Shown one piece after another: positions 1 through 44,031 of a DNA stretch of 44,031 nt. Source of the DNA: Macrostomum lignano (Eukaryota); the NCBI GenBank assembly GCA_002269645.1, contig NIVC01004500.1, positions 1-44,031 of the forward strand, in the 5' to 3' direction. Numbering within the stretch: position 1 is the stretch's first letter; each line of letters begins with the position of its first letter. The translations under genes and the position numbers were made by a program. The notes beneath the pieces are model-generated. The model had not been told where the DNA came from, made no database searches, and saw nothing but the letters and a program-made list of their open reading frames with translations.

Positions 1-149
1 CACTTGATCGCAGACAATAAGCCAATTAAGTAAATAAAAAGTTATTCAAGTAGACAACTTAATAAATATCAGCACCAGATGTAGAAATACTTGCCGGAAT
101 ACCTGCTCTGAATTCTCTACTTAGTTGTCTTTTAGCCAGAAAGAGTTTT

Positions 150-412
150 CTATGGTCGAGAGTGCAAGGCTTTGTTGTCTATGGTCGAGAGCATGGCTTT
201 GTTGTTCATAGTCGAGAGTGCAAGGCTTTGTTGTCTATGGTCGAGAGCATGGCTTTGTTGTTCATAGTCGAGAGCGCAAGGCTTTGTTGTCTATGGTCGA
301 GAGCATGGCTTTGTTGTCTATGGTCGAGAGCATGGCTTTGTTGTTCATGGTCGAGAGTGCAAGGCTTTGTTGTCTATGGTCGAGAGCATGGCTTTGTTGT
401 CCATGGTCGAGT
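150..412. repeat. Minisatellite, about 9 units of 28-29 bp in two alternating variants
   Basis: Units ATGGTCGAGAGTGCAAGGCTTTGTTGTCT and ATGGTCGAGAGCATGGCTTTGTTGTTCAT read directly. They explain ORFs 162..446 and 218..439. Confidence 0.92.
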
Positions 413-1245
413 GCAGTTCTATGGCAGTGGCTGCTGTAAAGTCTGAAGACTGCGGTTTAAGCTGAGCGAGAATAATACGCGAGGCCTAAACTGGCCAAGT
501 TAGCGATTATATATTTGAGGTTCTAAAAGTGAACAATACGATGTACATGAATTATGCAAACCAAGATGTACATTTATGCTAGAATATAACTCACTCACTC
601 AGAACAAATCGATAACAATATTGCGAGGCACTTACAGCTGCATCGAGTGAGAATTCTCAACTTGATCGGGTTAATTATCGCCTACTACAGTTTGGTGCAC
701 CGAAACAACGAGGCAACCTCTTAAGTAAGTCACCGAGTGGCATGCGGACCTTTTAAGATATTTTTAGCTGCTGTGGCCATTTACGGCATGAGCAGCCCAC
801 CCATTTCAATCGAATCGTTGAGCACACTATTCTAAAGCTTGAAATTTGTTACGAAAGAAAGCGAGAATTTTTTTATTTATAAAAGGGCGGATCTTTATCT
901 GATTGGCAGCGTGAAACCCGAGTGACCCATGGCGGATGCGAAGATCAGTGGCCTCTTTCTACGTCTTTTTCTCAGAAATCCGACACCGTTCCTAACTATC
1001 TTGCGTATACGGGATTCGAGCAGGCAAATTTCCTTTTTGTATCCGGGCTTTTAGATAATATCATCCCCATGCGGCGCTTGGGATTTGAGACATAGCTCGG
1101 CTATAATATCGCTTCTGTTTGCGTTTCGATAATTCCGTGCGTGTGCTGAAGTACTGCTGCGAGTCAAAGCGCTTTTAAGTTAGAGAACTGGCCTTTGAGG
1201 CAACGGTTGTGGCCTTGTAGAAATAATACTAGGTTCTTCTGACTG

Positions 1246-2733: not shown

Positions 2734-2997
2734 TGCTTAGTTAGAGCGTTGTTACAACTTGAAGGTCGGGGGTTCGATTACCGATCCCACTGGAACAATT
2801 TGTGTCCTTGAGCAAGACACTTAACTCTGCATTGCTTCAGTCCACCCAGCTGTAAAATGGGTGCCAGCATTAGCTGGGGTAATTGAGGCTGTGTGTGGCG
2901 ACCCCACAGTCCTTGGATTGAACAGCCATACCCAGCCCTCAGATGCGCCGCGCAATAGCTGTGGCTGAGCTGTCGGTTGCACAATTGTCCATTAGGG
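2718..2997 (+). mobile_element. tRNA-derived SINE, copy 1, with CORE/V-like central domain
   Basis: A-box-like TAGCCAAGTGC and B-box GGTTCGATTACC (2771). Core GTGTCCTTGAGCAAGACACTTAAC...CAGCTGTAAAATGGG. A second, inverted copy lies at 7564-7846. Confidence 0.85.
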
Positions 2998-3078
2998 TAC
3001 AAGTACCGGCAAGGATAAAACTAGCAATTGAAGTTCTGCACAATTTTTCCCATCCCTCGCAGCCAATTCAATCCCGGC

Positions 3079-6000
3079 ATGCGGCTGAGCGAGTCCGTCC
3101 AGCGCTGCCTGGGCCAGTTCGCCAAGTCCCAGTCGCGCCTCACCGCCTACTGTAACGGCGCCATCGGCGAGATCCAAAGCGGCCTCAAAGGCTGCCTTCT
3201 GCTGGAGCGCGGCCTCTGCCGGCAGGCGGCCCAGTCAGCGGAGGCCTCGCAAGCGGCCTCAGCCGAGCTGGCGAACCGCCGGCCGGGCCTCTTATTCAGC
3301 GGCCGAGGGGCGGTCGTCGACCTGGCCGCTTGCTTCTCTGGCGAGATTGGCGAATCGCTGGAGGCGCTGCGCAGCCGGCGAGTGCCAGCGAACGGCGGCC
3401 TGCTGTGGCTGGAGCACGACCCCGCTCTGCCTGACGACGGCCGCGTCGCCGTGGTGAAACGCCGTCGACTTCACCGGCAGCGGCCAGGCGATGCGGGCGA
3501 CCTGCGGCAGCGAAGCTTCATCGACTGGGTGGCCGCCCTGCAGTGGCTGGCCGAGGCCCAGACTGCCAGCAGCGACGAAGACGAATCGGACACCGGAGAC
3601 TGCGTCGAATACGATGACGTGTTTGACGACTGGGAGCTGCGGGCGAACTGCCCCGGCCTAGACAGCCTGCGGCTGGTGCTGGCGCCGCTTCTGACGCCGT
3701 ACACACGCCGCCGACTGCGCCGATTCATGCCAAGCTGCGCGATCTTCCTGCAGCGCCTGTCCTCTGACGAAGACGCCGGCGAGGCGGAGAGCGAGATCGG
3801 GGAGGCCGTTGAGCACGGCGTACTGCTGCACTTGGATGACACCCAGGCGACTGTCGCGCTGAAGCAGAGCCAGCTGCGGTTCGCCATCGACGCCAGGGTC
3901 TGTCCGGACTTCATCGAGACGAGCCGCGGCCTGGTTGACGCGGCTCTACGCGACTTTGTGAAAGACTCGGAGGAGCGACGGCATCGCCTTTTAGTCGATG
4001 GCGATTGGCAGCTGGACGGCCTGCTGAGCGAGCAGCTGAGCCAGCTGCAGCGAGACAGCCTGCGGCAGCTGGTGAAGAGCCTCACCGCGCTCAACGCAGT
4101 GACGCGGGGAATCCTCGTCAAGCGGCGCTCAAATGACTTCTCCGGCCAGGAGCAGCGCCGGCCGCAGCGCAGCTTCTTCGGCGACTTGCAGCGACTGCAG
4201 GAGTCGGCGGGCAAAGCGGCGAGCAGCTTTCAGCGCTCGTTTGAAAGCCGCCTTGGCAAACTGTCAGAGCAGATCCAGGCCCACCTGCGCCAGCAGGAGG
4301 TCAAAGACCGTCTCGCTTCGGCCTATGTTGCGCACAGCCTGCGGCACCCGCAGCTGAGCAAGGAGCAGCTACAGCGGTCCCTCATGGAAATGGTATCAGC
4401 GGAACTGCACGGCTGGAACCGGCACACCCGGATTCTGAGTGAGCTGGACCGCTGCATCGCCGAGTCACGAGTTCAGCACCTTCGGGCCCTGCGGCAGCAG
4501 GCGCAGTGCATCCCTGAGCTGCTTTTCTGCGTCCCCTCCGACTCGTTTTGCGCGCCGCCGCCCCCGTCTCCGACGCAGTCGTCCTCGGCTTCAACTTCCG
4601 GTGCCGCCTTCGAGATGGTCGGCGGTGGCGAGGATTTTGAGGGGAGTTTGAGCAGCCAGACGGTCATCAGCGTGGGCATCCGGCAGCTGGGCTGGCAGCC
4701 GATGCGGTCCAGTATGGCGCAGAGCTTGGCGGTGGGCATCGGCATGCCGCTGTTCGTCCCGCTGGCTGCCATCACAATGGCTATTATCTGGCCGGTGTCC
4801 GCAATCCGCCGTCAGCCGTCGAAACGACGGGCACCAAAGCGAAGGAGCGCGCACGAGTCACCCGAGAAGCTGCGCGACGACGCCTGGGACTACTTGGACA
4901 AACTCTCCAAAAACTTCATCAACAAAAACTTCTTTGTGCCCACGCGACGCTTCCTACAGCAGGACGTTGACAAGATGAGCAAGTTTGTGGACCGGTACTG
5001 CATTCTGCCGGAGAAGGCTCCGCAGCAGACTATGCAGCAGCACCAGCTTGACCCTTCAAGGCAGCTGGGGGAGCTCGAAAATCTCTACGTCCGCCTGCAG
5101 AACCTCATCGCCGATGCCAAGCTCTACGGAGCGGTGCAGCTGGGCGACGGAATGCTGCCACCGGAGAGCTGCAGACGCCTCGGCATTAGCACCGAGGTCG
5201 AGGACGCGATGCTCATTGGCGAACGAATCGGCAGCACATACTTCTCGGAAGTTTTCGCCCTGCCCCAGCAGCAGCCGCCTCTGGCACTGAAGCTGATCCG
5301 GTCGAACATGGCAGCCTCGGCGCTGCTCGAGGCAGAGATGCTCCGAGAGCTGGCCGATGACCCGCACCCGAACCTGCTGCCCGGCCTAGGCTGCCTGTAC
5401 TTTCCCAGGCTGAACCGCATCGGCCTCATGATGCCGCTGTGTAAGGGCAACCTTCGTCAACTGTTGAAGCAGCACCGGAAGCAGCTGGTGCCCGCGGTGG
5501 CGGACGACCCGGACGCCGTCTTGCCCGTCTGTCTCGGCCTCTACCAGCAGGTTCTCGCTGGCGTCCGGCACTTGCACCGGCTGCGCATCCTGCACCGCGA
5601 CCTCAAGCTGGAGAACGTGCTCGTCGACATCGGCGAGGCTACGGGCGCGCCACGCGACGCCCGGCTGCGCATCTGCGACTTCGGCTTCGCCAAGAACGAA
5701 GAGGCCATGTCCGGGGCGAGCTTCGCAGGCACGAAGGGCTACCTGGCGCCCGAGCTGGTGCCGCCCAGGCCGCAGTACTCCATCAAGTCGGACGTGTTTG
5801 CCCTGGGAGTGATGCTGTGGGAGTGCTACTACGGCACCTCCGCGCCTGCTGGCTCGCCGGAGTTCGCGCCGGCTCTGCTGGACGGCAACAAGAGCGTGGA
5901 TTTTCTCATCCGGCAGATGACGCACCACGCAGTGCTGGTGAGTGAGGCGGGGGGTGGTGCGTTTCCTACGCCTGTGTGCTCATGCTTATGTTCTCTTCCC

Positions 6001-6248
6001 TCTCTCCTCACTGCTTTCTGATTGGCTCTCATCTCTTCTTTTCTAAGTCATGTTTGACTGCATCTTGTACTCTCTACTCATGGACAACTCATGCAAAGGA
6101 AACATAGCTCAATCCCACATTGTCTTGGTAACTACAGGAGAGGCCACACGTGGAGCAGTGCATCGCCATGCTGAAGGTGCGGGATTGGGTGAACGGCAGC
6201 TGTGGAGATGCCTGCCTGGTCAACTACTCAGACAGTCTGCATGCTTGA
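3079..6248 (+). CDS. DSTYK (RIPK5)-like protein kinase, about 989 aa; exons 3079-5937 and 6138-6248
   Basis: Kinase motifs ALK, alphaC Glu (LEAE), HRDLKLENVL, DFGFAK, YLAPE, SDVFALG. GTGAGT donor at 5938 and TACAG acceptor at 6137 join ...MTHHAVL|ERPHVEQCIAML..., supplying the subdomain XI Arg; TGA at 6246-6248. HRDLKL.NVL, DFGF.K.E.MSG and the long helical N-terminus (PGLLFSGR vs DSTYK PCILILGQ) recall DSTYK. Acceptor CTCGCAG at 3062 precedes the ATG at 3079. Confidence 0.85.
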
Positions 6249-7563: not shown

Positions 7564-7846
7564 TTAATAATAATAACCTGCCCTAATGGCCAGATGTGCA
7601 ACCGACAGCTCAGCCGCAGCTATTGCACGGCGCATCTGAAGGCTGCGTACGGCTGTTCAGTCCAAGGACTGGGGGGTCGCCACACACAGCCTCAATTACC
7701 CCAGCTAATGCTGGCACCCATTTTACAGCTGGGTGAACTGAAGCAATGCAGAGTTAAGTGTCTCTTGCTCAATGACACAAATTGTTCCGAGTGGGTCAAG
7801 AATCGAACCCCCGACCTTTAAGTCGTGAGTTCTAGGCTACAAAGCC
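7564..7846 (-). mobile_element. tRNA-derived SINE, copy 2, inverted relative to copy 1
   Basis: Reverse complement aligns to 2718-2997 over about 260 bp. B-box GGTTCGATT; (TTA)n tail at 7564-7576; shortened D-arm region. Confidence 0.85.
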
Positions 7847-8639: not shown

Positions 8640-21226
<12,587 letters not shown>

Positions 21227-21513
21227 AGTTCCTTTTCAAACCTTTTTAATCAATGTAATATATTTCTATTGCATCCACAAAAACCGGCGGCACGTCGCTG
21301 ACCCTCCAAATTAAAAAAATGTTTGCAGAAATTTCTTGTCAAAATTTATTTACACTAGCAGCACCGTAAAACAAAAACACTTTTGAAAACGAACTATTTA
21401 TGGCTTTAAAAGGTTTGTAATTGCAAATAGCTTTTCAAAACTTTTTTAATTGCATTTAATGATATTTTAGGTTATTTTACTCTTTGACAAATATCTGTTT
21501 TAAATTGCTTTAA

Positions 21514-23020
21514 TGTAAAAAAATGAAGGGCCGAGACTAACATTTGAACTTTCAGCCGTCGAGAGTGCCAAGTCAGAGCGCGAACTCTTATTAACAATCG
21601 ATGATTTATATTTATATTGGTTACTTATCAGTCATTAAAACAAAAGTTTCATTATAAAATTATCTTGCAAAATAACATAAATTACATACAGTAAAAAGTA
21701 CAGTGAGATAAATACTATATAAATACTATAATACCAATACAACCTGATAAGAGTAAATACGAAATTATTTACTTTTAAATTACATACGCAGATATGTTAC
21801 ATTATCCTCCTCTTAGAAAAGACAATGTCCACATTGTCAAAAGTACAATTAACAAAAGAGTAGAATACAAAGTATAGAAAATAACTATTAAATATACAGT
21901 ACATGCTAAATTTTGAGCAAAAAAAAGATTGAACTCGCATTCCCAACTAGACATCGCAATGAGGTGACAGAACACATTTCAAAACAATGGTCTGGACCAA
22001 AAGAGAAGCTAGTTAACCAACACAAAAACCAGAACCCAACAGGGTTAGCAGAGCCCTGGGTTCTCCCCACCACAACCAGTGCAGAGCACAGCATGAATGA
22101 AGCAAAAAACACTTTATTAATAAAAGGAATTTGCCTGTGCACACTATTGTGATACACTGCCATTGGGTGAAACCTTACAAAACACAGAAGAAAATACAGT
22201 ACAACATTGAAAAATTATTTGAAAAGTAAAGTACATCATGGCAATTGCCAAAATTCAGTATAAAGTACATATGAAGGAATTACAGTAAGTATATAAATTA
22301 ACAATTAAGTACAGTTACATTAAAATCAATCAACAAAGCATAGGAATTGGAAAATGCAGCTTCCTGGTTCTGGACTTTAGAACAGCATAATTACAAATTT
22401 AAAAACAAAATTTTGCTCTGAACTGGGTACACATCTACATGTACATTCTACAGCTAGTATTGTATTTGAACATAGATGCTTTTAAGAAAACAAATATAAT
22501 ATTCGAAATCACTCAGCGACTGACAGTATCTGCAGCACCTGTCCTTTGGCAGCATCTTCGGCACCTGTGATTTTGTTGGCCTGGCTCGCGGCTGGCTGAC
22601 ATACTGGTTGGCGTCGGCTAGCTGGACGCGCGCTGCATGCTGATGTGATTGGCTGCGTTGCTGTACATTTGCGGTCGATCAGAAGATTCAGCGGAGTCCT
22701 TCATGGAATCCGAGTTCTGGTGTGGTCGCCATTGTAAAAAAATGAAGGGCCGAGACTAACATTTGAACTTTCAGCCGTCGAGAGTGCCAAGTCAGAGCGC
22801 GAACTCTTATTAACAATCGATGATTTATATTTATATTGGTTACTTATCAGTCATTAAAACAAAAGTTTCATTATAAAATTATCTTGCAAAATAACATAAA
22901 TTACATACAGTAAAAAGTACAGTGAGATAAATACTATATAAATACTATAATACCAATACAACCTGATAAGAGTAAATACGAAATTATTTACTTTTAAATT
23001 ACATACGCAGATATGTTACA
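21514..23020 (-). mobile_element. Non-autonomous LTR retroelement (TRIM-like), 1507 bp, with identical 288-bp LTRs
   Basis: 21514-21801 and 22733-23020 are identical and bounded TGT...ACA. On the minus strand, PBS TGGCGACCAC (22731-22722) sits 1 nt after the 5' LTR and PPT AAGAGGAGGATAA (21814-21802) abuts the 3' LTR. The 931-bp interior has no gag/pol ORF. The TSD is not clean (TTAA vs TTAT). Confidence 0.85.
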
Positions 23021-23254
23021 TTATCCTTGCAAATGAAATTTTGCTCTCTAAAATGACGAAAACAACCTTTTCTGCTTTCTTTCATTCTATTGCTAATCGA
23101 CTGCCTCATTACTTATTATTCACTGTTTTACTGGGGTGTAATTTTTCTATATTTTTACAGCAAGCTGTTTTTTATTTATAGATTGATTTTCTATTTCTTT
23201 TAAAGATAAAGCTTTTTCCTAGGCCGATTCTCAATGAATTCACCCTAAAGTCTA

Positions 23255-24911
23255 CAGTCATGCACAAAAGTAAGTACACCCCAAGCAAAAATTGAGAAAA
23301 ACTGTTAAAATTTCTGAACCGTCAGCTGTATTACAACTAAACTGAATCACAATGTTCCTTATTGACTGGCATTTATTTTGACACATCAAGCTTTGAAAAA
23401 CTCTTTGTGACTACGGAGCTATGGCCAAAAATGCTCAAACACACCTGTGCAAAAGTAAGTACACCCTGTCTTAATACTTTGTAGCTCCGCCTCATGCAGC
23501 CACCACAGCCAAGAGCCGCTTGCGGTAGCCATTCACCAGGGCAGCGCACCTTTCAGCGGGCACTTTCCGCCACTCCTCAATGCAGAATTCGGCCAATTCC
23601 CGCAGATTCTTCGGCTTCCTTGCGTGAACCATCTTCTTGAGATCCGTCCACAGCATCTCGATCGGGTTCAGGTCAGGGCTCTGGCTTGGCCACTCCATGA
23701 CCTTGATGCGCCTCTGCTGCAGCCATCGCCAAGTTGCAGCGCTCGTGTGCTTGGGGTCATTGTCCTGCTGCAGTGTCCAAGCTCGTCTAAGACCGAGGTC
23801 ATGCACTGATGGCTGCAGGTTTTCGTCAAGGATCTGCTGATACACAGCCGAATTCATCTTCTCGGTGATGTGCATCAGCCTGCCGGTGCCAGCAGCTGCA
23901 AAGCAGCCCCACAGCATGATGCTGCTGCCTCCGTGCTTGACTGTTGGCTTTAGGTGTTTCTGCTCAAATGAGGTGTTTGGCTTGCGCCACACGCGCTGCT
24001 TCTCATTCCTGCCGAACAGCTCAATCTTGGTTTCATCAGTCCAAAGCACTGACTGCCAGTAGCTGTCCGGCTTGCTCAGCATCGCATTAGCGAACTGCAG
24101 CCTAGCATCGCGATGTCGCTGCTGCAGCAGAGGCTTTTTTCTTGGAATGCAGCTGCGGAGGCCCACGCGGTTTAGGGCTCGGCGAACAGTAGTCCTGTGC
24201 GGCAATAAGCCAGCTGCATTCAGCATCTGCTGCAGCTTGCATGATGTTGCATTTGGGTTTTGGCTGACTTCTTGCGTGAGTTTGCGCAGCGCGCGAGCTG
24301 AAATTTTGCTCAGCCGGCCACTGCGAGGCAGAGATACTGTGGTGCCGTGCTGCTTGTACTTTGCGATGATGCGCCTAACCGTTGATACATGCACATTGAA
24401 GGCAGTCGATATCCACTTGTAGCCATCGCCACTATCGTGAGCTGCTACAATGCAATTTCTTAACTGAACTGACAGCTCCTGGCCTCTTGGCATTGTCCTG
24501 GCGTGTATCAAGTCAATGACGAAGCAGCTGCATTGCACATGAGCTTTATAGTAGCATGAAAACCAGTAGCTGAGCCGATTGAGAGCAGGGGCAAGCAGGA
24601 CTAAAGTCGCTGGTGACGTAACAGGCAGTGAGGCGGCTGGCAATGTACTTATGGTGGCTCGCATCTGCACAGAGGAGGTTATACTGGTAGTAAAGGGCAG
24701 GGTGTACTTACTTTTGCACAGGTGTTTTTGAGCATTTTTGGCCATAGCTCCGTAGCCACAAAGAGTTTTTCAAAGCTTGATGTGTCAAAATAAATGCCAG
24801 TCAATAAGGAACATTGTGATGCAGTTTTGTTGTAATACAGCTGACGGTTCAGAAATTTTAACAGTTTTTCTCAATTTTTGCTTGGGGTGTACTTACTTTT
24901 GTGCATGACTG
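23255..24911 (-). mobile_element. Tc1-family DNA transposon, IR/DR type, 1657 bp
   Basis: 214-bp TIRs (23255-23468, 24698-24911) with about 4 differences. Each TIR carries outer and inner direct repeats GCA(C)AAAAGTAAGTACACC. TA duplication at 23253-54 and 24912-13. Confidence 0.97.
23492..24493 (-). CDS. Tc1 transposase (DD34E), 333 aa, truncated by a TGA seven codons before the ancestral stop
   Basis: MPRGQELS HTH start at 24493; WTDETK, QQDNDPKH, SPDLNPIE with D-34-E spacing. After ...AVVAA-TGA the frame continues GGC GGA GCT ACA AAG TAT TAA (GGATKY*), the usual Tc1 C-terminus. Confidence 0.93.
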   Translation of the reverse strand: MPRGQELSVQLRNCIVAAHDSGDGYKWISTAFNVHVSTVRRIIAKYKQHGTTVSLPRSGRLSKISARALRKLTQEVSQNPNATSCKLQQMLNAAGLLPHRTTVRRALNRVGLRSCIPRKKPLLQQRHRDARLQFANAMLSKPDSYWQSVLWTDETKIELFGRNEKQRVWRKPNTSFEQKHLKPTVKHGGSSIMLWGCFAAAGTGRLMHITEKMNSAVYQQILDENLQPSVHDLGLRRAWTLQQDNDPKHTSAATWRWLQQRRIKVMEWPSQSPDLNPIEMLWTDLKKMVHARKPKNLRELAEFCIEEWRKVPAERCAALVNGYRKRLLAVVAA

Positions 24912-25188
24912 TATGCTTAGACAAGCTATTTGATCATGCAATATAAGAATTGCCAATAGTTTTTTTTCTCCTCATATACATAGCTCTGATATATATGGGA
25001 AGCTAGTATACATATATGTGATGTATATAAGAAAAGATGTTTATTTATTTAGACTTAGAGCAATTGATACTTATAATTGATTAAGTTGATTTGCAAAAAA
25101 CTATAGTCAGCCTAGGCTATGTGGCTAAACTAAACTATAAGATACAAGCTACATTGTACAATTTTCAAAATATTCATATGATGGCAAT

Positions 25189-25406: not shown

Positions 25407-27818
25407 TTTTATAAAGGCAGTGCTTATCCCCACGGTACCGTAGAAATAATTTCTGTCTTATTCCAACAGTACCATGAGGATAATTTTCTGCTTATCCGCA
25501 CGGCACACTGACAAGATAGGGCGAATTGTTGAAGCAATACAATAATCTATACAAACAAATTAAGAATTTACATGTCTAATAAAAGTCTATAAAAGTGGCA
25601 ATGGACTTTTTGGGGATCTCGCGGATTAGACTAGTTGCTAAAAATAAAATTATAAACAATTACTAGAGCAATTTACCTTAAATCATACGTCATAATTACA
25701 AAAAGTGTTTTTTGCATAAAAAGGCCATTAAATCTTTTTTAATACTAAAGCTGACACAATGTTTGTGTGTATGTGTGTTGTAAGTGAACTCCTACAATTC
25801 TGCCAAGTCAGTGTCAAAACTTATATGGGAAAACTGCAAATTTTCCAAAGCAGGCTTTAGGCTATTTTAATTTTTAATTTTCACATTTTAACATCCCTAA
25901 AAAAGCAGCAAACTGCTTTTTTAACCCCCAATAACCTTCTTTGGCCACTCTGCCTAGGGCTGCAGCCAGTTTGTAAAAATAGCCACCCTAACCTCCGCCT
26001 GCGGGCCACTGTGTATTGAGGGGTAGTGGGTGCGCGTGTTCTGGGTTCAATGCAAATAAACCCCCGCGTGTTGGGGGGTTGAGTTAAATTTAATGCTTCC
26101 CCCAGAACGGGGGTTGGGATTGGGCTAAGTGTACATAGCAGTTGTACAGTATAAACAGATAGACTGTGTCGAGATTCAATTGGTTTTATTATTGGCGCCT
26201 TTTTTCTATAGGCAGCCCTGTGTATTAGTTTGGCAGTGAAATTCAATGAATAAACTTGCGAGCTTCTCTAGCAAGCAGTCCGGAAATTGGTAAATTTCAA
26301 ACGCTAACTGTTCCTCGAGTTTTAAACTTTGAGAGGAGAAACTTATATTGCTGGAATCTCTCTTAATACTAAAAGTAGTGCGATGTTTGTCTGTTTGTCT
26401 GTTTGTCTGTTTGTCTGTGTGTTGCAATTTTTCTCCTAGAATACTGGCAAGTCAGCGTTGAAACATATGGTGAAACTGCAAATTTTCCGGGTCGGGCTAT
26501 AGGCTATTTTAATATTTTATTTTCGATTGTTAAGATCCTTAAAAAAGCAGAAAACTGCAATCTTGACCTTTGATAATCTTATTTGTCCCCTCTTTCTGCT
26601 CGGAGCTGATAAAATGCATCAATTTTAATTGCTTGCGCCATAACTTTCTCCTATCTTGCCAGTGCATTTCTCTCCAGTTTGGGGATGGGGCGTTCTAAGT
26701 GGCTGCGTGTATACACTTAGACCCTGGCTCACTGGCGCACTGTATAGATGATTGTGCAATGATTTGGCTACTGTTAAGTTGTTCTGCCTTTCAATATGAA
26801 GCCCTGTGTATTGTAGGACAGTGAAATTCATTGCATAACTTGCAAGTCGCTTTAACAGGTGGTAAGCGTACACTCGATATTTCAATGCTTTAAATTGGAA
26901 AGTTGTAAACACTAACTGCTCTTTGAGTTCTAAACTTTAAGAGAAGAGACTTATATTGCCGGAAAGAGCTTGCAACACTGAGTTTGGAGGTATAAGTTGT
27001 TTGCTTTAAATATGAAAACAAAAAGGACAGCATTCAAAAACTATTTCCAATCTTTTAACTTTCTGCAAAGATTGTACTCATTTTCGCGAGACGTAATAGA
27101 TAAAGTCGGGGGGAGGATTCAACTTCTTACTGCCACTGTGTATTGGAGGGTTGATTTAGATTGTGCAATCATTTTGTTAACTTTACCTGAGCCTGATACT
27201 GACTAAATGAGAAATTGGTTGCGCAATAAATTGATTCAATTAGTTTAATATTCTTATTGACGCCTTTCAACCCGCAGCTATGTGCAGCTCTAACCCTAAA
27301 CCTAACCACTGATGGCACTGAACCCTGAGAGTTGAGTTCTTTTTGACGGAGAAAATTTCAATTTAGTCCAGTTTTACGGAAAGGATTTCGATGGTTTTCA
27401 GTTTCACAGAGAGGATTTCTGTTTCGTGGAGCGGATTTTATTGGTGTTCAGTTTCACGGAGAGGATTTTTTGTCTTCAAAGAGGAGTTGGATAATGGGAT
27501 TCGGGTCATGGGATTCAGCTGATGGATTTCAGGGAATGGAATTCTGGTGATGGGAGTTCTTCCCCTTTCTCCTCCATCGGAGGAGTTGGCCTCGTAATTC
27601 TATAAAACTAATGGCCAAGCAAAGTTATGTTGTTATATTGCACTTAAACCATAAGTACTAAACTCTAAATTATGAACCCACAGCATATGTAAAAAATAGG
27701 GCAGCTATCTCGTCAGTGTGCCATGCAGATAAGCAGAAAATTATCCCCATGGTACTGTTGGAATAAGACAGAAATTATTCCTACGGTACCGTGGGGATAA
27801 GCACTGCCTTTTATAAAA
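25407..27818. mobile_element. Non-autonomous TIR element, about 2.4 kb, with about 113-bp inverted termini
   Basis: 25407-25519 is the reverse complement of 27705-27818 (about 5 substitutions and 1 indel), beginning TTTTATAAAGGCAGTGCTTATCCCCACGGTACCGTAG. No transposase ORF; superfamily undetermined. Confidence 0.75.
25741..26990. mobile_element. Two diverged tandem units of about 624 bp resembling Lep1/DINE-like non-autonomous Helitron heads
   Basis: Both units (25741, 26365) start AATACTAAA followed by a TGTT/TGTC microsatellite. They share blocks such as AAACTGCAAATTTTCC, AAAAAAGCAG, GCCCTGTGTATT and CTTATATTGC. Family assignment is from memory. Confidence 0.5.
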
Positions 27819-29665: not shown

Positions 29666-30597
29666 CCCGATGGGAAAAGGGCAGCCTCTAATTTTTACCC
29701 TAGCCTCAAATGCAGCCTCGAATGAACCTCAAAGTGGATTTTTTTGAGGCTGGTTTGATGCTAGCCTCAAAAATAATCTTTAACCTCAAAAGAGATTGTA
29801 TTTGATGCTGGATTTGAGGCTAGAGTAGAGGTTCAAATTAGAGTCTGAGATAGAGGCTAGATTCGAGGCTGGATTAGAGGCTTTTTTGAGCCTGGATTTG
29901 ACGTTTAATTTAGAGGCTAAATTTGAGGCTGGATTAGAGGCTTTTTTTGAGCCTGGATTTGATGTTTAATTTAGAAGCTAAATTCGAGGCTGGATTAGAG
30001 GCTTTTTTTGAGCCTGGATTCGACGATTAATTTAGAGGCTAAATTCAAGGCTGGATTAGAGGCTTTATTTGAGCCTGGATTTGACGTTTAATTTAGAGGC
30101 TAAATTCGAGGCTGGATTAGAGGCTGGATTAGAGACTGAATTAGAGGCTAGATTAGAGACTGAATTAGAGGCTGGATTAGAGACTGGATTCGAGGCTGGA
30201 TTAGAGACTGGATTCAAGGCTCAATTAGAGGCTGGATTAGAGGCTGTATTAGAGACTGAATTAGAGGCTGGATTAGAGACTGGATTCGAGGCTGGATTAG
30301 AGACTGGATTTGAGGCTCAATTAGAGGCTGGATTAGAGGCTGGATTAGAGACTGAATTAGAGGCTGGATTAGAGACTGGATTCGAGGCTGGATTAGAGAC
30401 TGGATTTGAGGCTCAATTAGAGGCTGGATTAGAGGCTGGATTTGAGGCTAAATTTGAGGCTGGATTAGAGACTGGATTCGAGGCTAAATTTGAGGCTGGA
30501 TTAGAGGCTGGATTTAAGGCTAAATTTGAGGCAGGATTCGAGGCTAAATTTGAGGCTGTATTAGAGACTGGGTTAGAGGCTGGAATATCCCGCTGGG
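29666..30597 (+). mobile_element. CCC-ended element A with expanded 12-bp subterminal repeats (TTAGAGGCTGGA)
   Basis: Left end CCCGATGGGAAAAGGGCAGCCTCTAA; right end reverse complement CCCAGCGGGATATTCCAGCCTCTAA. Dozens of GAGGCT motifs. Resembles CMC/EnSpm-type non-autonomous elements (inference). Confidence 0.6.
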
Positions 30598-31610: not shown

Positions 31611-32431
31611 CCCAGTTGCTGGGTCAGCCTCTCATTGACAATCTCGAAATTGCCAGCCTTTAATCCAGCCTCTAACTGAGCATCAAATTGCCAGCCTCTA
31701 ATTCAGCCTCTAATTCAGCCTCTAATTGAGCCTCTAACTGAGCATCAAATCGCCAGCCTCTAATTGAGCCTCTAATTCAGCCTCTAACTGAGCATCAAAT
31801 CGCCAGCCTCTAATTGAGCCTCTAATTCAGCCTCTAATTGAGCCTCTAACTGAGCATCAAATCGCCAGCCTCTAATTGAGCCTCTAATTGAGCCTCTAAT
31901 TCAGCCTCTAACTGAGCATCAAATCGCCAGCCTCTAATTGAGCCTCTAATTCAGCCTCTAACTGAGCATCAAATCGCCAGCCTCTAATTGAGCCTCTAAT
32001 TCAGCCTCTAATTCAGCCTCTAACTAAGCATCAAATCGCCAGCCTCTAATTCAGCCTCTAATTCAGCCTCTAACTGAGCGTCAAATCGCCAGCCTCTAAT
32101 TGAGCCTCTAATTCAGCCTCTAATTGAGCCTCTAACTGAGCATCAAATCGCCAGCCTCTAATTGAGCCTCCAATACGAGCCTCAAATTGCCAGCCTCTAA
32201 TTGAGCCTCCAATATGAGCCTCAAATTGCCAGCCTCTAATTGAGCCTCCAATACGAGCCTCAAATTGCAAGCATCAAATCTGGGTCATTTTTAGAGGCTG
32301 CGACACCCAAGAGTCGAGCCTCTAACCCAGCCTCTAGCCTCCCATTGGTTTAGTGTAACCAAATAAAAAAAATCATTAGAGGCTAGCGCCAAAAAGTGAG
32401 CCTCCAACACCCCTCCAGATTTTCCATCGGG
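31611..32431 (-). mobile_element. CCC-ended element B, an inverted relative of element A (CAGCCTCTAATT repeats)
   Basis: Starts CCCAGTTGCTGGGTCAGCCTCT and ends TTTTCCATCGGG, the reverse complement of A's left end. 12-bp repeats run in the opposite orientation to A. Confidence 0.6.
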
Positions 32432-34979: not shown

Positions 34980-36592
34980 AGAGATGTAGTATTAAGGATA
35001 AGAGATGTGGGATTAGGGATAAGAGATGTAGGGTTGAGGATAAGAGATGTAGGATTATGGATAAGAGATGTAGGATTATGGATAAGAGATGTAGGATTAT
35101 GGATAAGAGATGTAGGATTATGGATAAGAGATGTAGGATTATGGATAAGAGATGTAGCATTGGGGATAAGAGATGTAGCATTGGGGATAAGAGATGTAGG
35201 GTTGAGGATAAGAGATGTAGGATTATGGATAAGAGATGTAGCATTGGGGATAAGAGATGTAGGGTTGAGGATAGGAGATGTAGGGTTGAGGATAAGAGAT
35301 GTAGGATTATGGATAAGTGATATAGGATTATGGATAAGAGATGTAGGATTATGGATAAGAGATGTAGGATTATGGATAAGAGATGTAGCATTGGGGAAAG
35401 AGATGTAGGGTTGGGGATAAGAGATGTAGGGTTGAGGATAAGAGATGTAGGATTATGGATAAGAGATGTAGGGTTGGGGATAAGAGATGTAGCATTGGGG
35501 ATAAGAGATGTAGCATTGGGGATAAGAGATGTAGCATTGGGGATAAGAGATGTAGGATTATGGATAAGAGATGTAGCATTGGGGAAAGAGATGTAGGGTT
35601 GGGGATAAGAGATGTAGGGTTGAGGATAAGAGATGTAGGATTATGGATAAGAGATGTAGGGTTGGGGATAAGAGATGTAGCATTGGGGATAAGAGATGTA
35701 GCATTGGGGATAAGAGATGTAGCATTGGGGATAAGAGATGTAGCATTGGGGATAAGAGATGTAGGATTATGGATAAGAGATGTAGGGTTGGGGATAAGAG
35801 ATGTAGGGTTGAGGATAGGAGATGTAGGGTTGAGGATAAGAGATGTAGGATTATGGATAAGAGATGTAGGATTATGGATAAGAGATGTAGGATTATGGAT
35901 AAGAGATGTAGGATTATGGATAAGAGATGTAGGATTATGGATAAGAGATGTAGCATTGGGGAAAGAGATGTAGGGTTGGGGATAAGAGATGTAGGGTTGA
36001 GGATAAGAGATATAGGATTATGGATAAGAGATGTAGGGTTGGGGATAAGAGATGTAGCATTGGGGATAAGAGATGTAGCATTGGGGATAAGAGATGTAGC
36101 ATTGGGGATAAGAGATGTAGGATTATGGATAAGAGATGTAGCATTGGGAAAGAGATGTAGGGTTGGGATAAGAGATGTAGGTTGAGGATAAGAGATGTAG
36201 GATTATGGATAAGAGATGTAGGGTTGGGATAAGAGATGTAGCATTGGGATAAGAGATGTAGCATTGGGATAAGAGATGTAGCATTGGGGATAAGAGATGT
36301 AGGATTATGGATAAGAGATGTAGGGTTGGGGATAAGAGATGTAGCATTGGGGATAAGAGATGTAAGGTTGGGGATAAGAGATGTAGCATTGGGGATAAGA
36401 GATGTAGGGTTGAAGATAAGAGATGTAGGGTTGAGGATAAGAGATGTAGGATTAGGGATAAGAGATGTAGCATTGAGGATAAGATATGTAGGGTTGAGTA
36501 TAAGAGATGTAGGGTTAAAGATAAGAGATGTAGGATTGAGGATAAGAGATGTAGGATTACGGATAATGCATGCAGGATAACGGATCAGAGAT
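34980..36592. repeat. 21-bp minisatellite (GGATAAGAGATGTAGGATTAT and variants), about 76 units
   Basis: Direct read. It explains the IRDVGLW / MDKRCRI / LHLLSII ORFs. Confidence 0.97.
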
Positions 36593-36799
36593 GAAGGATT
36601 AAGAAGTAAAATAAGTAGAATTTGCTTTTGTGTTGCATTCTGATCAGTAGAAGTGCAGCAATCCAGTCAAAAGCTTTACTCGCACTACTCTATCCTGCCC
36701 CAATTCATGTTAAAGCATCAAGAATTGCCTATCCCTCATCCGGTTAGCAACTGAGCTGTTCTGTTTACTTGTGCACTCACCCAGTGTTCTCAGCGACCG

Positions 36800-39271: not shown

Positions 39272-39902
39272 TTATGTCAGACTAATCATGTCAGGAAGCA
39301 GACTAGTCATGTCAGGAAGCAGACTAATCATGTCAGGAAGCAGACTAGTCATGTCAGGAAGCAGACTAGTCATGTCAGGAAGCAGACTAGTCATGTCAGG
39401 ATGCAGACTAATAATGTCAGGAAGCAGACTAGTCATGTCAGGAAGCAGACTAGTCATGTCAGGAAGCAGACTAATCATGTCAGGAAGCAGACTAATCATG
39501 TCAGGAAGCAGACTAATCATGTCAGGAAACAGACTAATCATGTCAGGAAGCAGACTAATCATGTCAGGAAACAGACTAATCATGTCAGGAAGCAGACTAG
39601 TCATGTCAGGAAGCAGACTAATCATGTCAGGAAGCAGACTAATCATGTCAGGAAGCAGACTAGTCATGTCAGGATGCAGACTAGTCATGTCAGGAAGCAG
39701 ACTAATCATGCCAGGAACCAGACTAATCATGCCAGGAACCAGACTAATCATGCCAGGAACCAGACTAGTCATGTCAGGAACCAGACTAATCATGTCAGGA
39801 AACAGACTAATCATGCCAGGATGCAGACTAATCATGTCAGGATGCAGACTAGTCATGTCAGGAACCAGACTAATCATGTCAGGAAGCAGACTAATCATGT
39901 CT
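39272..39902. repeat. 21-bp minisatellite (ATCATGTCAGGAAGCAGACTA), about 30 units
   Basis: Direct read. It ends about 60 bp upstream of the RPS8 ATG. Confidence 0.96.
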
Positions 39903-40924: not shown

Positions 40925-41590
40925 GGAGCGGACAAGCAGGTAAAGGGAGTAGAAGGGAAGCGGACAGGCAGACTCAGGGAGCAGGAGGGGAGCGGACAGG
41001 CAGATTCAGGGAGTAGGAGGGAGCGGACAGGCAGATTCAAAGAGTAGGAGGGGAGCGGACAGGCAGATTCAGGGAGCAGGAGGGGAGCGGACAGGCAGAC
41101 TCGGAGTAGGAGAGGAGTGGACAAGCAGACTCAGGGAGTAGGAGGGGAGTGGACAGGCATACTCAGGGAGTAGGAGGGGAGCGGACAGGCAGACTCAGGG
41201 AGTAGGAGGGGAGCGGACAGGCAGACTCAGGGAGTAGGAGGGGAGCGGACAGGCAGACTCAGGGAGTAGGAGGGGAGCGGACAGGCAGACTCAGGGAGTA
41301 GGAGGGGAGCGGACAGGCAGGTACAGGGAGTAGGAGGGGAGCGGACAGGCAGGTACAGGGAGTAGGAGGGGAGCGGACAGGCAGGTACAGGGAGTAGGAG
41401 GGGAGCGGACAGGCAGACTCAGGGAGTAGGAGAGGAGCGGACATGCAGGCAGATTCAGGGAGTAGGGGGGGGAGCGGACAGGCAGACTCAGGGAGTAGGG
41501 GGGGAGTGAACAGGCAGGTAAAGGGAGTAGGGGAGTGACAGGCAGGTAAAGCGAGTAGGAGGGGAGTAGGGGAGGGGGGACGGACAGGCA
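40925..41590. repeat. 32-bp G-rich minisatellite (GGGAGTAGGAGGGGAGCGGACAGGCAGACTCA), about 20 units
   Basis: Direct read; degenerate at both ends. Confidence 0.94.
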
Positions 41591-41596
41591 GTTTCA

Positions 41597-44031
41597 ATGC
41601 AGGTAAAGTCGGGATACTCATGCTTATTGCATTTATTAAACGGGCCATTCAATTCCAGCTTTCCCAGCTGCCCCTGGTTGCCACGCTGTTGGCATGGGCG
41701 GCGGCCGCCGCGGCAGATTCGCCAGGCTGCGAGTTCAACTCCACCAGCCTGCCGTCGTCCGCGAAGCCGCCGCGCACCTCCTTTTGCTGACATCGTCGGC
41801 TTCAACAGACTCGGCGGCATCGACATCGCTGCAGGCGCCGCTGGGCGCCTGCTGTCCTACGGCTGCCCCGGCTTCACCGAGCGTCGCTACGCCGTCTGCC
41901 TGCCCGGCTTTGGCTGGCATCCGACGTGAGCTGCCCGAAGTCGCCCGCTCCGATCCCCGACGAGCTGCCTTGGGGCGTCTGCCGCGTCCCCGGCGTGCGG
42001 CCCCGGCCGAGGCGGACCTGGCGCCCGTCTGGTCCAACCTCACCGCCTCTCCCGGGCAGAGCGTCTACGTGGATTGCATCGGCGCCGACTCGGTGCTGGG
42101 CCCGGCTCGGTGGACTTGTCTGCCGGTGCAGCTGATCCTTCCGGCTCGTCCACCGCTGCGGCCGCTACTGACAAGCCGGCGCCAGCCGTTGGTCGCTGGG
42201 ATCGCAACAGCCTGCCGAGATGCGTTCGACAGTCGGTTCGCTGCTGCGACCCGCTGCTGCCACGGCCGAGAGGTGCCTCAATCCGGCCTGCAATTTCTAC
42301 TTTGCAGACTCGGTGGCCGTGTTCACGTGAGTGACAGTGAGGACTTGTGGCGCAGACAGTAAGGCTGAAAGTGCCTCAGCGTTAGTACTAGCTCCTTACT
42401 CAATGCCAGCTCTCTGTGCTTCAGACTGGCACTGAGGTACTAAGAGACTGGCACTGCGGTACTAAGAGACTGGCACTGAGGCACTAAGAGACTGACACTG
42501 AGGCACTAAGAGACTGGCACTGAGGCACTAAGAGACTGGCACTGAGGCACTAAGAACTGGCACTGAGGCACTAAGAGACTGCACTGAGGCACTAAGAGAC
42601 TGGCACTGCGGTACTAAGAGACTGGCACTGAGGCACTAAGAGACTGCACTGCGGTACTAAGATACTGGCACTGCGGTACTAAGAGACTGGCACTGAAGTA
42701 CTAAGAGACTGGCACTGAGGTCTAAGAGACTGGCACTGAGGTCTAAGAGACTGGCACTGAGGTACTACATGTAGGAGACTGGCACTGAGGCACTAAGAGA
42801 CTGGCACTGAGGTACTAAGAGACTGGCACTGAGGTACTACATGTAGGAGACTGGCACTGAGGCACTAAGAGACTGGCACTGAGGCACTAAGAGACTGCAC
42901 TGAGGTACCAAGAGACTGGCACTGATAAGCCATTGAGCTGATACTAAAACTCTAAGATTCCCTAGGATGCGCTGCTATTTTACAACAGAATCCACCTTCG
43001 CTTTCACAATGCTTTCAACTTGAATCCTTTTCCCCATATGCGCAGTTGCGGCGTCGCCAAACCGCACACCTGTGCCAGGCCAACGCACCTGGTATCCCGG
43101 CACGGAGTCCCCTGTGCGCCACTGCACCGCCAACAGTCGGGGCAGGCCGGCTCGCCCAACCTGATGACCACCCTGGCCTGGGTGCTGGGCCCGTGCGCCG
43201 TGCTGGCCCTGCTGCTGCTGGCCGTGCTCTCGCTCTGCTCGCCTACGCCGGCGAGATTTCTGCGCCGGCGCCGGCGCGTCACAATCCGCCGCTGGCTGCC
43301 ATAGTTGCCGCGGCCGCGGCTCAACTGCTTCCCTGGGGCCGCTGCCGCGCCTCTGACCCCGTCGCTGCAGTCGCGACGCCGCCTACTTTGACGAATTCGA
43401 CTACTCAGTTATGCCAGCGGCGGCTACTACTATGAACGACTTGGCGCATCGACCTGCTGCTCGACCTCGTCCGTCGGCGGCGCAGCTTCCCTCGGGCCTC
43501 GTCCGGCCGCCTACGACGACGACGGCGTCGGGGGTGTGACGGCAGCGGCGCGCTGCGGAGGCGATCTGGTGCGCCTGCTGTCAGCCGCCAAGGCCGCGCC
43601 AGCTACGATGAGGCGGTGGCCGCCGACAACCCGGCTGCGCTGTTCCGGCCGTCGATCCGCTGTCCGCGTGGCCGCGGACGGCCGCACCAACGGCTTCGGC
43701 CTCGGCGGCTGCCGGCGCCGCTCCTGCTCTGCAACGGGCAACCCGGCGTCGCGCAGCCTCTCGGGCGCCCAGTCGCGTCGACGGCCGCGCCCGCTGCAGT
43801 CGACTGGACCTCTCGCCGGCGGCGGTCTGTGCGACGGGGACACTCTGTCAACTTCACCGCGTCAGCCTGCCGGCCCAGCTGTCTCCATTGCCGGGGCGCC
43901 GCGTCGCCGCAGCAGCAGCAGCAGCAGCAGTCCCAGTGTCGCAGCTCCCTGGAACGATGGCCTCAGCGACGGCACTTCGGTGACGCTGCCGACTCTGAAA
44001 GCACCAGCAGCCGCAGCCTGGCCAGCAACCG
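41597..44031 (+). CDS. Predicted type I membrane protein with 2-3 sushi/CCP-like modules; frameshift-ridden and incomplete at the window end
   Basis: Tentative micro-exon ATG CAG|GTAAAG (41597-41602), 56-bp intron, then signal peptide [19 protein letters not shown]. Cys/Trp patterns SYGCPGF..VCLPGFGWHP..SC, VDC..SVLG..RWTC..GRWD..LPRC and HLCQANA.WYPG..SP. Donor GTGAGT near 42328, acceptor CGCAG at 43045. TM LAWVLGPCAVLALLLLAVLSLC followed by RRRRR, then a low-complexity tail. Confidence 0.55.
42423..42925. repeat. 22-bp minisatellite (AGACTGGCACTGAGGCACTAAG), about 22 units, in the intron of the sushi-like gene
   Basis: Direct read. Confidence 0.94.

What the first reader, a model, noticed from the sequence alone, without database searches (positions are those of the whole stretch)
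21514..23020. Very young TRIM-like retroelement with identical LTRs, a tRNA-Arg-type PBS and no coding capacity
Seen: 288/288 identical LTRs with TG..CA ends, PBS TGGCGACCAC, PPT AAGAGGAGGATAA and a 931-bp non-coding interior with a GC-richer leader after the PBS. Established: TRIMs are mobilised in trans; in flatworms Ta-TRIM of taeniid tapeworms is strongly expressed in stem cells. The PBS is complementary to tRNAs ending GUGGUCGCCA (Arg-UCG type, from memory). Inference: a possibly undescribed, currently active free-living flatworm TRIM family. Oddity: identity extends 7 nt (TTATCCT) beyond the right LTR, matching the PPT, and no clean TSD is present. This could reflect a former tandem TRIM array or recombination.
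Basis: partly seen in the sequence, partly recalled or inferred. Interest (0 to 1): 0.7.

Follow-up and report, generated by a model that had tools for sequence, protein, structure and literature searches.

The report
Young non-coding LTR retrotransposon insertion
A 1.5-kb non-coding LTR retrotransposon inserted recently just upstream of a gene in the flatworm Macrostomum lignano; a sister contig of the same assembly still has the empty site, so the insertion is real but of an ordinary kind.

Summary
Window 21514-21808 and 22733-23027 are 295/295 identical. They contain two 288-nt LTRs (TGTAA...TTACA) around a 931-nt interior with no coding signal. The element lies on the minus strand: 5' LTR 22733-23020, PBS TGGCGACCAC(A) one base after it, PPT AAGAGGAGGATAA before the 3' LTR.

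The window is the whole contig NIVC01004500.1 of the Macrostomum lignano assembly Mlig_3_7. A sister contig, NIVC01000148.1, is about 99.5% identical in the flanks and carries the empty site GCAAGG-TTAA-AGC.

The filled site reads GCAAGG-ATAA-[1507 nt]-TTAA-AGC. This is a point insertion with a 4-bp target duplication whose upstream copy differs by one base. No tandem array or recombination is needed.

tRNA genes ending GTGGTCG in a metagenome sample were 80% tRNA-Arg, mostly anticodon UCG, so the PBS call is reasonable.

Not testable here: copy number, solo LTRs, the autonomous partner, and expression. No second copy lies in the ~103 kb of M. lignano DNA I could reach. Published M. lignano LTR surveys would have missed this element by design.

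Verdict: a genuine, recent, TRIM-like non-autonomous LTR element; a new member of a known kind, of modest interest.

The parts
23021..23024 (-). Upstream copy of the 4-bp target-site duplication. It reads ATAA on the element strand, where the empty site has TTAA.
   Evidence: Empty site GCAAGG-TTAA-AGC against filled 5' junction GCAAGG-ATAA-TGTAAC.
22733..23020 (-). 5' LTR, 288 nt, TGTAA...TTACA, 27.8% GC.
   Evidence: It is 100% identical to the 3' LTR.
22823..22839 (-). CCAAT plus TATA-like motif (CCAATATAAATATAAAT) at LTR positions 182-198 of the 5' LTR. This is the inferred promoter. The same motif lies at 21604-21620 in the 3' LTR.
   Evidence: motif scan. The promoter function is inferred, not shown.
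22714..22731 (-). Primer-binding site. The core TGGCGACCAC is at 22722-22731. The 11th base (A, 22721) also matches many tRNA-Arg(UCG). A possible extension runs to 22714 (TGGCGACCACACCAGAAC). A single spacer base A sits at 22732.
22521..22720 (-). GC-richer leader (55-57% GC). Its fold is no more stable than shuffled sequence, and it has no coding or RNA-family signal.
   Evidence: (z = -0.13).
21815..22520 (-). Rest of the non-coding interior. The longest sense ATG ORF is 85 aa (21906-22163), with no homologue and no Pfam domain.
21802..21814 (-). Polypurine tract AAGAGGAGGATAA, directly upstream of the 3' LTR.
21514..21801 (-). 3' LTR, 288 nt, identical to the 5' LTR. It ends 287 nt upstream of the start codon of the KATNAL2-like gene (ATG at 21226, same strand).
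21510..21513 (-). Downstream copy of the target-site duplication, TTAA, identical to the empty site.

Best explanation
This is a 1,507-bp non-autonomous LTR retrotransposon on the minus strand of a Macrostomum lignano contig. It is TRIM-like and has no gag or pol.

Shown: two identical 288-nt LTRs with TG...CA ends, and a tRNA-type primer-binding site one base after the 5' LTR. Shown: a polypurine tract abutting the 3' LTR, and no coding capacity. Shown: a precise point insertion at a TTAA that is still unoccupied in a ~99.5%-identical sister contig of the same assembly.

Inferred mechanism: an RNA was transcribed from an LTR promoter of a source copy elsewhere in the genome and packaged by the Gag/Pol of an autonomous LTR element. 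M. lignano has many such elements, mostly Ty3/Mdg4. Minus-strand synthesis was primed by a tRNA ending ...GUGGUCGCCA, most likely tRNA-Arg(UCG), and plus-strand synthesis by the PPT. An integrase that makes 4-bp staggered cuts then inserted the cDNA.

The insertion happened after the two copies of this locus diverged. It lies 287 bp upstream of the ATG of a KATNAL2-like gene, in the same orientation, so the 3' LTR could feed transcripts into that gene. That last point is inference only.

The upstream TSD copy reads ATAA instead of TTAA, which equals the four bases preceding the 3' LTR. Candidate causes are: (a) retention of a 4-nt PPT-derived 5' flap of the cDNA that annealed in the integration gap; (b) a short gene-conversion tract or point change; (c) a Pilon polishing artefact from reads of the PPT-LTR junction.
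For: - Repeat and anatomy.
- Organism and contig identity: 100% match to BOX15_Mlig018162g1; the window is all of NIVC01004500.1, 44,031 bp.
- Empty site: (window 27000-23021 aligns to L002 5739-9717, and window 21513-20000 to L002 9714-11227), junction sequences, and the three-way alignment.
- Flank divergence: 10 mismatches plus 2 gaps in 1,500 nt upstream, and 2 mismatches in 1,500 nt downstream.
- No coding or RNA-family signal.
- PBS type: of 85 tRNA genes ending GTGGTCG, 68 are tRNA-Arg (54 with anticodon TCG) and none is Trp. 35 of the 54 match an 11th base.
- Availability of autonomous partners: 137 LTR-RT families in M. lignano, mostly Ty3/Mdg4.
- Assembly redundancy that explains the sister contig: 180 Mb of duplicated blocks at >=95% identity, assembled with Canu and polished with Pilon.
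Against: - No second copy, solo LTR or same-PBS element was found in the window, L002 or L003, about 103 kb in all. The existence of a family is therefore inferred only from the fact of transposition.
- The TSD is imperfect (3 of 4).
- The target heptamer AGGTTAA resembles the PPT end AGGATAA at 6 of 7 positions. Only 0.1-0.2% of positions in local sequence do so. This hints that something other than random integrase targeting shaped the left junction.
- The host tRNA set was not available, so the PBS-tRNA match is to tRNAs of other organisms.
- The same PBS core has been labelled both Arg and Trp in the HERV literature.
- Zero LTR differences is only weakly informative on age. About 1 difference would be expected even at the age of the contig split.
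Confidence: 0.8

Rival explanations
1. A one-off internally deleted copy of an annotated autonomous M. lignano LTR family. The deletion would have arisen by template switching during reverse transcription. On this reading it is not an independently spreading TRIM family.
For: No other copy was found in the DNA I could reach. At 1,507 bp with a 931-nt interior, it is larger than classic 0.5-1 kb TRIMs (definition quoted). The GC-rich 200-nt stretch after the PBS resembles the GC-rich coding DNA of this genome and could be a relic of a parent's leader or gag start.
Against: No trace of Gag, protease, RT, RNase H or integrase appears in any frame. The sample searched is only ~0.013% of a 764-Mb assembly, so absence of a second copy says almost nothing.
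Confidence: 0.25
2. The cDNA was not inserted by concerted integrase action. It was captured at a double-strand break, or was a one-ended integration. The left end would have been joined by microhomology (AGG) between the target and a cDNA that still carried PPT-derived bases. On this reading there is no TSD at all: the insert is ATAA + LTR-interior-LTR placed between GG and TT.
For: The filled site equals the empty site plus exactly ATAA and the element, with no base of the target duplicated or lost. The 6-of-7 similarity of the target to the PPT end is rare by chance, at 0.1-0.2% of positions.
Against: The right end stops exactly at the LTR's CA and lacks the spacer A that a full-length cDNA would carry. 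This is what integrase 3' processing produces. The offset of the two junctions is exactly 4 bp, the TSD length typical of Ty3-type integrases and of ta-TRIM. Three of the four TSD bases match.
Confidence: 0.1
3. One reading: a remnant of a tandem LTR-interior-LTR-interior array, or a product of recombination between two elements. This would explain the 7-nt extension and the missing TSD.
For: Identity does extend 7 nt past the 5' LTR and matches the PPT end.
Against: The empty site shows that AGG is pre-existing target and that the whole unit sits at one point, flanked by (A/T)TAA. Recombination between two elements would not leave flanks that are contiguous in the empty allele.
Confidence: 0.03
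4. Assembly artefact or local segmental duplication that merely mimics LTRs.
For: Mlig_3_7 is a redundant PacBio/Canu assembly polished with Pilon. Perfect repeat identity can come from consensus collapse.
Against: A misassembly would not create TG...CA LTRs with inverted ends, a PBS at +1, a PPT at -1, and a single-point insertion with a 4-bp offset relative to an independent contig.
Confidence: 0.02

Closest known systems
ta-TRIM of taeniid tapeworms (Koziol et al. 2015, PMC4558846)
   Same: A non-autonomous LTR element of a flatworm with LTRs, PBS and PPT, no ORFs, and a 4-bp TSD (52 of 57 in E. multilocularis). It is presumed to be mobilised in trans by a Ty3-type element.
   Different: ta-TRIM uses an 8-nt PBS for tRNA-Leu, whereas this element has an Arg(UCG)-type PBS of at least 10-11 nt. 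ta-TRIM was reported as restricted to Taeniidae, with no similar sequence in other flatworms. ta-TRIM copies are old and have no recent insertions in E. multilocularis; this copy is insertion-polymorphic with identical LTRs. Expression is unknown here.
Plant and ant TRIMs (Witte 2001; Kalendar 2008 Cassandra; Zhou and Cahan 2012), as summarised
   Same: The same architecture and the same presumed parasitism of autonomous elements. It falls under the <4 kb definition.
   Different: Classic TRIMs are 0.35-1 kb, with 100-250-nt repeats and 100-300-nt interiors. This element is 1,507 bp, with 288-nt LTRs and a 931-nt interior. It sits between a classic TRIM and a small LARD (figures for classic TRIMs partly from my own knowledge).
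Autonomous M. lignano LTR retrotransposons: Ty3/Mdg4 clades Mag, CsRN1, Gmr1/Osvaldo and Mdg3, plus Copia and Bel/Pao (Ustyantsev et al. 2025, PMC12801592)
   Same: Same host. There are many young families, and the 4-bp TSD is compatible with Ty3-type integrases. These are the likely source of the proteins that moved this element.
   Different: Those families were found by seeding on reverse transcriptase, which this element lacks. No canonical three-unit heat-shock element is present in this LTR.
LTR elements with the TGGCGACCAC... PBS, such as the HERV9/HERV-W group
   Same: The same 10-nt PBS core, tggcgaccac.
   Different: Unrelated elements in an unrelated host. Beyond the core the sequences diverge (ACCAGAAC here, GAAGGGAC in HERV9), as expected for species-specific tRNA T-arms. 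The amino-acid label in that literature is disputed (Arg versus Trp). My tRNA sample supports Arg.

Membership tests
LTR retrotransposon (order LTR, class I) | Two long terminal direct repeats with 5'-TG...CA-3' ends and short terminal inverted repeats. | tested here: met
   288-nt LTRs, 100% identical, TGTAA...TTACA.
LTR retrotransposon (order LTR, class I) | [quoted passage not shown] | tested here: met
   TGGCGACCAC(A) sits one base after the LTR. It is complementary to the GTGGTCG+CCA ends carried mainly by tRNA-Arg(UCG) in a sample of 85 tRNA genes from metagenomes. The host's own tRNA was not available.
LTR retrotransposon (order LTR, class I) | [quoted passage not shown] | tested here: met
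   AAGAGGAGGATAA abuts the 3' LTR; 12 of 13 bases are purines.
LTR retrotransposon (order LTR, class I) | Target-site duplication of 4-6 bp, and an empty site in a homologous sequence. | tested here: met
   The empty site GCAAGG-TTAA-AGC is in NIVC01000148.1. The filled site has ATAA...TTAA, a 4-bp offset with one mismatch in the upstream copy.
TRIM (terminal-repeat retrotransposon in miniature) | No coding capacity for Gag or Pol. | tested here: met
   The longest sense ORF is 85 aa. There was no Pfam hit at E <= 0.01, no homologue among 5.8 billion proteins, and no Rfam family.
TRIM (terminal-repeat retrotransposon in miniature) | Small size. | tested here: inconclusive
   At 1,507 bp it meets the <4 kb definition quoted. 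It exceeds the 'typically 0.5-1 kb' range and the classic 100-250-nt repeat length.
TRIM (terminal-repeat retrotransposon in miniature) | A multi-copy family with independent insertions and solo LTRs. | not testable with these tools
   Only ~103 kb of M. lignano DNA was reachable, and it holds no second copy. No collection that can be searched by DNA holds this genome (one search found nothing).
TRIM (terminal-repeat retrotransposon in miniature) | An autonomous partner sharing LTR termini, PBS and TSD length. | not testable with these tools
   The consensus sequences of the 137 published families are not held.
ta-TRIM (Taeniidae) | PBS complementary to tRNA-Leu, shared with the lennie element. 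| tested here: not met
   The PBS here is Arg(UCG)-type. ta-TRIM uses tRNA-Leu.
ta-TRIM (Taeniidae) | Sequence similarity of LTRs to ta-TRIM. | not tested
   No ta-TRIM sequence was at hand. Koziol et al. report no similar sequences outside Taeniidae.

The most novel reading that the evidence does not exclude
The element represents an undescribed TRIM-like family that is still transposing in the laboratory DV1 line of M. lignano, mobilised in trans by one of its Ty3/Mdg4 families. The ATAA/TTAA junction would be a footprint of the reaction itself: a 4-nt PPT-derived 5' flap of the cDNA ligated into the integration gap. That would reveal where RNase H cuts the plus-strand primer. The allele-specific insertion 287 bp upstream of a KATNAL2-like gene could then act as an LTR promoter, as ta-TRIM solo LTRs do in tapeworm stem cells.
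Probability: 0.25. Interest if true: 0.5.

Novelty: new member of a known kind. Interest (0 to 1): 0.3.

Why it matters
M. lignano is a transgenesis-capable model for stem cells and regeneration, and LTR retrotransposons make up about 21% of its genome. Published surveys could not have seen elements like this one. One survey seeded on reverse transcriptase. The other required a TSD of at least 5 bp and dropped unclassified hits. Non-autonomous LTR elements are therefore a blind spot of the current annotation.

A copy that is present in one assembled copy of a locus and absent from the other is direct evidence of recent retrotransposition in this lineage. It also provides a ready PCR marker. 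If the family proves abundant or expressed, it would be the first TRIM-like family described in a free-living flatworm and a useful comparison with the stem-cell-expressed ta-TRIMs of tapeworms. On its own, a single young non-autonomous LTR insertion in a TE-rich genome is unsurprising.

Tried and rejected
1. Exact look-ups of the two longest interior ORFs in the gene-position index found nothing on record.
2. A homology search used a concatenate of all stop-free translations of at least 28 aa from the LTR and interior. It gave no hit at E <= 0.001, so protein collections cannot be used to find other copies.
3. A JGI metagenome scan for the LTR-end plus PBS 22-mer found 0 matches.
4. Look-ups of the neighbouring Tc1 transposase, meant to sample random M. 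lignano loci, found nothing on record for either the 417-aa or the 333-aa form.
5. The homeologous contig L003 has an upstream region that is not alignable, so it says nothing about the site. Its partial RT fragment has no LTR pair.
6. Rfam, Pfam and an RNA fold of the leader (z = -0.13) gave no signal.
7. [quoted passage not shown]
8. ARAGORN found no tRNA gene in the window, L002 or L003, so the host's priming tRNA could not be checked.
9. The bacterial-type promoter and terminator scan is irrelevant for a eukaryote. I used it only to spot a hairpin.
10. Rejected readings: tandem array or recombination, local duplication, and misassembly. All are contradicted by the empty site.

Full report
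**What is in the sequence**

The region contains a perfect direct repeat of 295 nt, 21514-21808 and 22733-23027. A 30-nt probe from its end matches exactly these two places, where 0 matches are expected by chance. A sensitive blastn of the element against the whole window finds nothing else.

Read on the minus strand, the anatomy is that of an LTR retroelement:
- 5' LTR at 22733-23020, 288 nt, TGTAA...TTACA.
- One spacer base, A.
- PBS TGGCGACCAC at 22722-22731, continuing ACCAGAAC to 22714.
- A 931-nt interior.
- PPT AAGAGGAGGATAA at 21802-21814.
- 3' LTR at 21514-21801.

The orientation is the reverse of what its wording implies. The LTR is 28% GC and carries a CCAAT/TATA-like motif at LTR positions 182-198. 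It has no canonical AATAAA and no three-unit heat-shock element. The 200 nt after the PBS are 55-57% GC.

**No coding or structured-RNA signal**

The longest sense ATG ORF is 85 aa. The main stop-free segments have no Pfam domain at E <= 0.01. A concatenate of all LTR and interior translations has no homologue among 5.8 billion proteins. Rfam finds nothing at E <= 1. The GC-rich leader folds no better than shuffled sequence (z = -0.13).

**Where it comes from**

A 997-aa kinase ORF in the window is 100% identical over the aligned half of the query to a Macrostomum lignano protein. The window is the complete contig NIVC01004500.1 of assembly Mlig_3_7.

**The decisive result: an empty site**

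The KATNAL2-like protein encoded next to the element (P0004) is annotated on two contigs. The second contig, NIVC01000148.1 (locus L002), aligns with the window on both sides of the element. Window 27000-23021 aligns to L002 5739-9717, and window 21513-20000 to L002 9714-11227. No element lies between them.

The junctions, read:
- Empty site: GCAAGG TTAA AGCAATTT
- Filled 5' junction: GCAAGG ATAA | TGTAACAT...
- Filled 3' junction: ...TTTTTTTACA | TTAA AGCAATTT

The whole LTR-interior-LTR unit is therefore a single-point insertion. The two junctions are offset by 4 bp. This is a 4-bp target-site duplication of TTAA whose upstream copy reads ATAA.

The flanks of the two contigs differ by 10 mismatches plus 2 gaps in 1,500 nt upstream, and by 2 mismatches in 1,500 nt downstream. 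The adjacent Tc1 element is present in both contigs. The insertion thus post-dates both the Tc1 insertion and the split of the two locus copies.

Mlig_3_7 is known to be redundant, with 180 Mb in duplicated blocks of at least 95% identity attributed to the DV1 karyotype. I cannot say whether the two contigs are alleles or recent duplicates. A third, homeologous contig (L003) is too diverged upstream to be informative.

**The 7-nt oddity**

Of the seven bases AGGATAA that precede both LTRs, AGG is already present in the empty target. ATAA is the TSD position with a single T-to-A difference. A tandem array or inter-element recombination is not needed. Both are contradicted by flanks that are contiguous in the empty contig.

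Two things still need explaining: the single mismatch, and the fact that the target heptamer AGGTTAA matches the PPT end at 6 of 7 positions. Only 0.1-0.2% of positions in this DNA do that. All of the following are inferences.

- (a) Flap retention. If RNase H cuts the plus-strand primer after ...GAGG, the cDNA starts with ATAA before TG. After integrase processing and strand transfer, this 4-nt 5' flap could pair with 3 of the 4 bases of the TTAA gap. It would then be ligated rather than removed, leaving an A/A mismatch that resolves to ATAA.
- (b) A point change, or a short LTR-LTR gene-conversion tract running into the similar flank.
- (c) A Pilon artefact. Short reads from PPT-LTR junctions could mis-map onto the 5' junction, which differs at only that one base within reach. 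The assembly was polished with Pilon.
- (d) Non-canonical end joining using AGG microhomology, with no TSD at all. Against (d): the right end stops exactly at CA, without the spacer A that an unprocessed cDNA would carry. The offset also equals a typical integrase stagger.

**PBS**

No tRNA gene lies in the M. lignano DNA I could reach. As a proxy, I scanned metagenome contigs for tRNA-like 3' halves ending GTGGTCG and typed them with ARAGORN.
- Of 85 tRNA genes, 68 are tRNA-Arg (54 with anticodon TCG), 14 are tRNA-Asp, 3 are other types, and none is Trp.
- 35 of the 54 Arg(TCG) genes also match an 11th base.

It also bears on a labelling dispute for the same PBS core in HERV9, Arg versus Trp, described in PMC4724089. 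Whether the complementarity runs to 18 nt depends on the host tRNA's T-arm, which is untested.

**How it most likely works**

The element is a non-autonomous LTR retrotransposon. Transcription would start downstream of the TATA-like motif in the 5' LTR of a source copy. The RNA would be packaged by the Gag/Pol of an autonomous element, primed by tRNA-Arg on the minus strand and by the PPT on the plus strand, and integrated with a 4-bp stagger. Only the end product and the empty site are shown. The intermediate steps follow from established LTR-retrotransposon biology.

M. lignano has at least 137 LTR-RT families, mostly Ty3/Mdg4 (Mag 78, Gmr1/Osvaldo 40, CsRN1 9), and some are strongly transcribed. 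Partners are therefore plentiful, but I could not identify which one.

The element lies 287 nt upstream of the start codon of the KATNAL2-like gene (ATG at 21226) and in the same orientation. On this copy of the locus, the 3' LTR could act as an upstream promoter or disturb the native one. This is speculation without RNA data.

**Comparison with known elements**

By the definition quoted in Koziol et al. (TRIM <4 kb, typically 0.5-1 kb) it qualifies as a TRIM, though a large one. It is not a ta-TRIM, which uses a tRNA-Leu PBS and was reported as restricted to taeniids.

A full-text search found TRIMs discussed for flatworms only in parasitic species. The two M. lignano LTR surveys would have missed this element by design. 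One was seeded on reverse transcriptase. The other used LTRharvest with a minimum TSD of 5 bp and discarded unclassified elements. Wudarski et al. mention in passing a '2-kb long LTR retrotransposon' at a transgene site, so short LTR elements exist in this genome. I could not check Repbase or Dfam.

**Limits**

These tools cannot search the M. lignano genome by DNA. Attempts to reach other copies through predicted proteins, the gene-position index, a metagenome scan or the neighbouring Tc1 transposase all failed. Copy number, solo LTRs, the autonomous partner, present-day activity and expression therefore remain open. Finding no second copy in ~103 kb says almost nothing for a 764-Mb assembly.

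**Verdict**

The tandem-array idea is rejected. The claim of an active family is untested. This is a new member of a known kind, of modest interest.

Noticed in passing
window 23248-24918: A Tc1/mariner element lies 227 bp from the LTR element. It has 221-nt terminal inverted repeats (97%) and an intact 417-aa ORF (23492-24745, minus strand) with HTH_SB, HTH_Tnp_Tc3_2 and DDE_3 domains. It is also present in the sister contig, so it is older than the LTR insertion.
   Followed up: partly
window 10621-17595: A 71-nt satellite of 98 copies at 99% matches fills an intron of the KATNAL2-like gene. The annotated gene span is 12,587 nt here against 11,246 nt in the sister contig, probably because of a difference in satellite copy number.
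   Followed up: no
window 2815-2997 and 7581-7763: 183-nt inverted repeats (94%) bracket the single-exon 997-aa protein-kinase ORF (3028-6021). It is unclear whether this is a transposon carrying a gene or a coincidence.
   Followed up: no
window 25413-25519 and 27705-27811: 107-nt inverted repeats (95%), 2,185 nt apart, look like a small DNA transposon or MITE. A 114-nt match lies at L002 4922-5035.
   Followed up: no
window 21821-21838 (minus strand): A perfect 7-bp hairpin, GACAATG-TGGA-CATTGTC, sits 6 nt upstream of the PPT inside the element. Its function is unknown.
   Followed up: no
window 23021-23027 versus L002 9711-9717: The target heptamer AGGTTAA matches the element's PPT end AGGATAA at 6 of 7 positions. 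Such heptamers occur at only 0.1-0.2% of positions. This could be coincidence or a microhomology effect on integration.
   Followed up: partly
L003 15260-16093: An ORF with a partial reverse-transcriptase (RVT_1) match (E 1.3e-5, below Pfam's cut-off) lies in an intron of the homeologous KATNAL2-like gene. There is no LTR pair around it.
   Followed up: partly
window 145-415, 2091-2734, 9922-10240, 19758-20149, 29800-30584, 31654-32267, 34980-36600, 39278-39901, 40925-41566, 42423-42925: Minisatellites are unusually dense, with units of 19-41 nt and up to 78 copies, and several fall within or next to genes. This is consistent with the reported 15% simple and tandem repeats in this genome.
   Followed up: no
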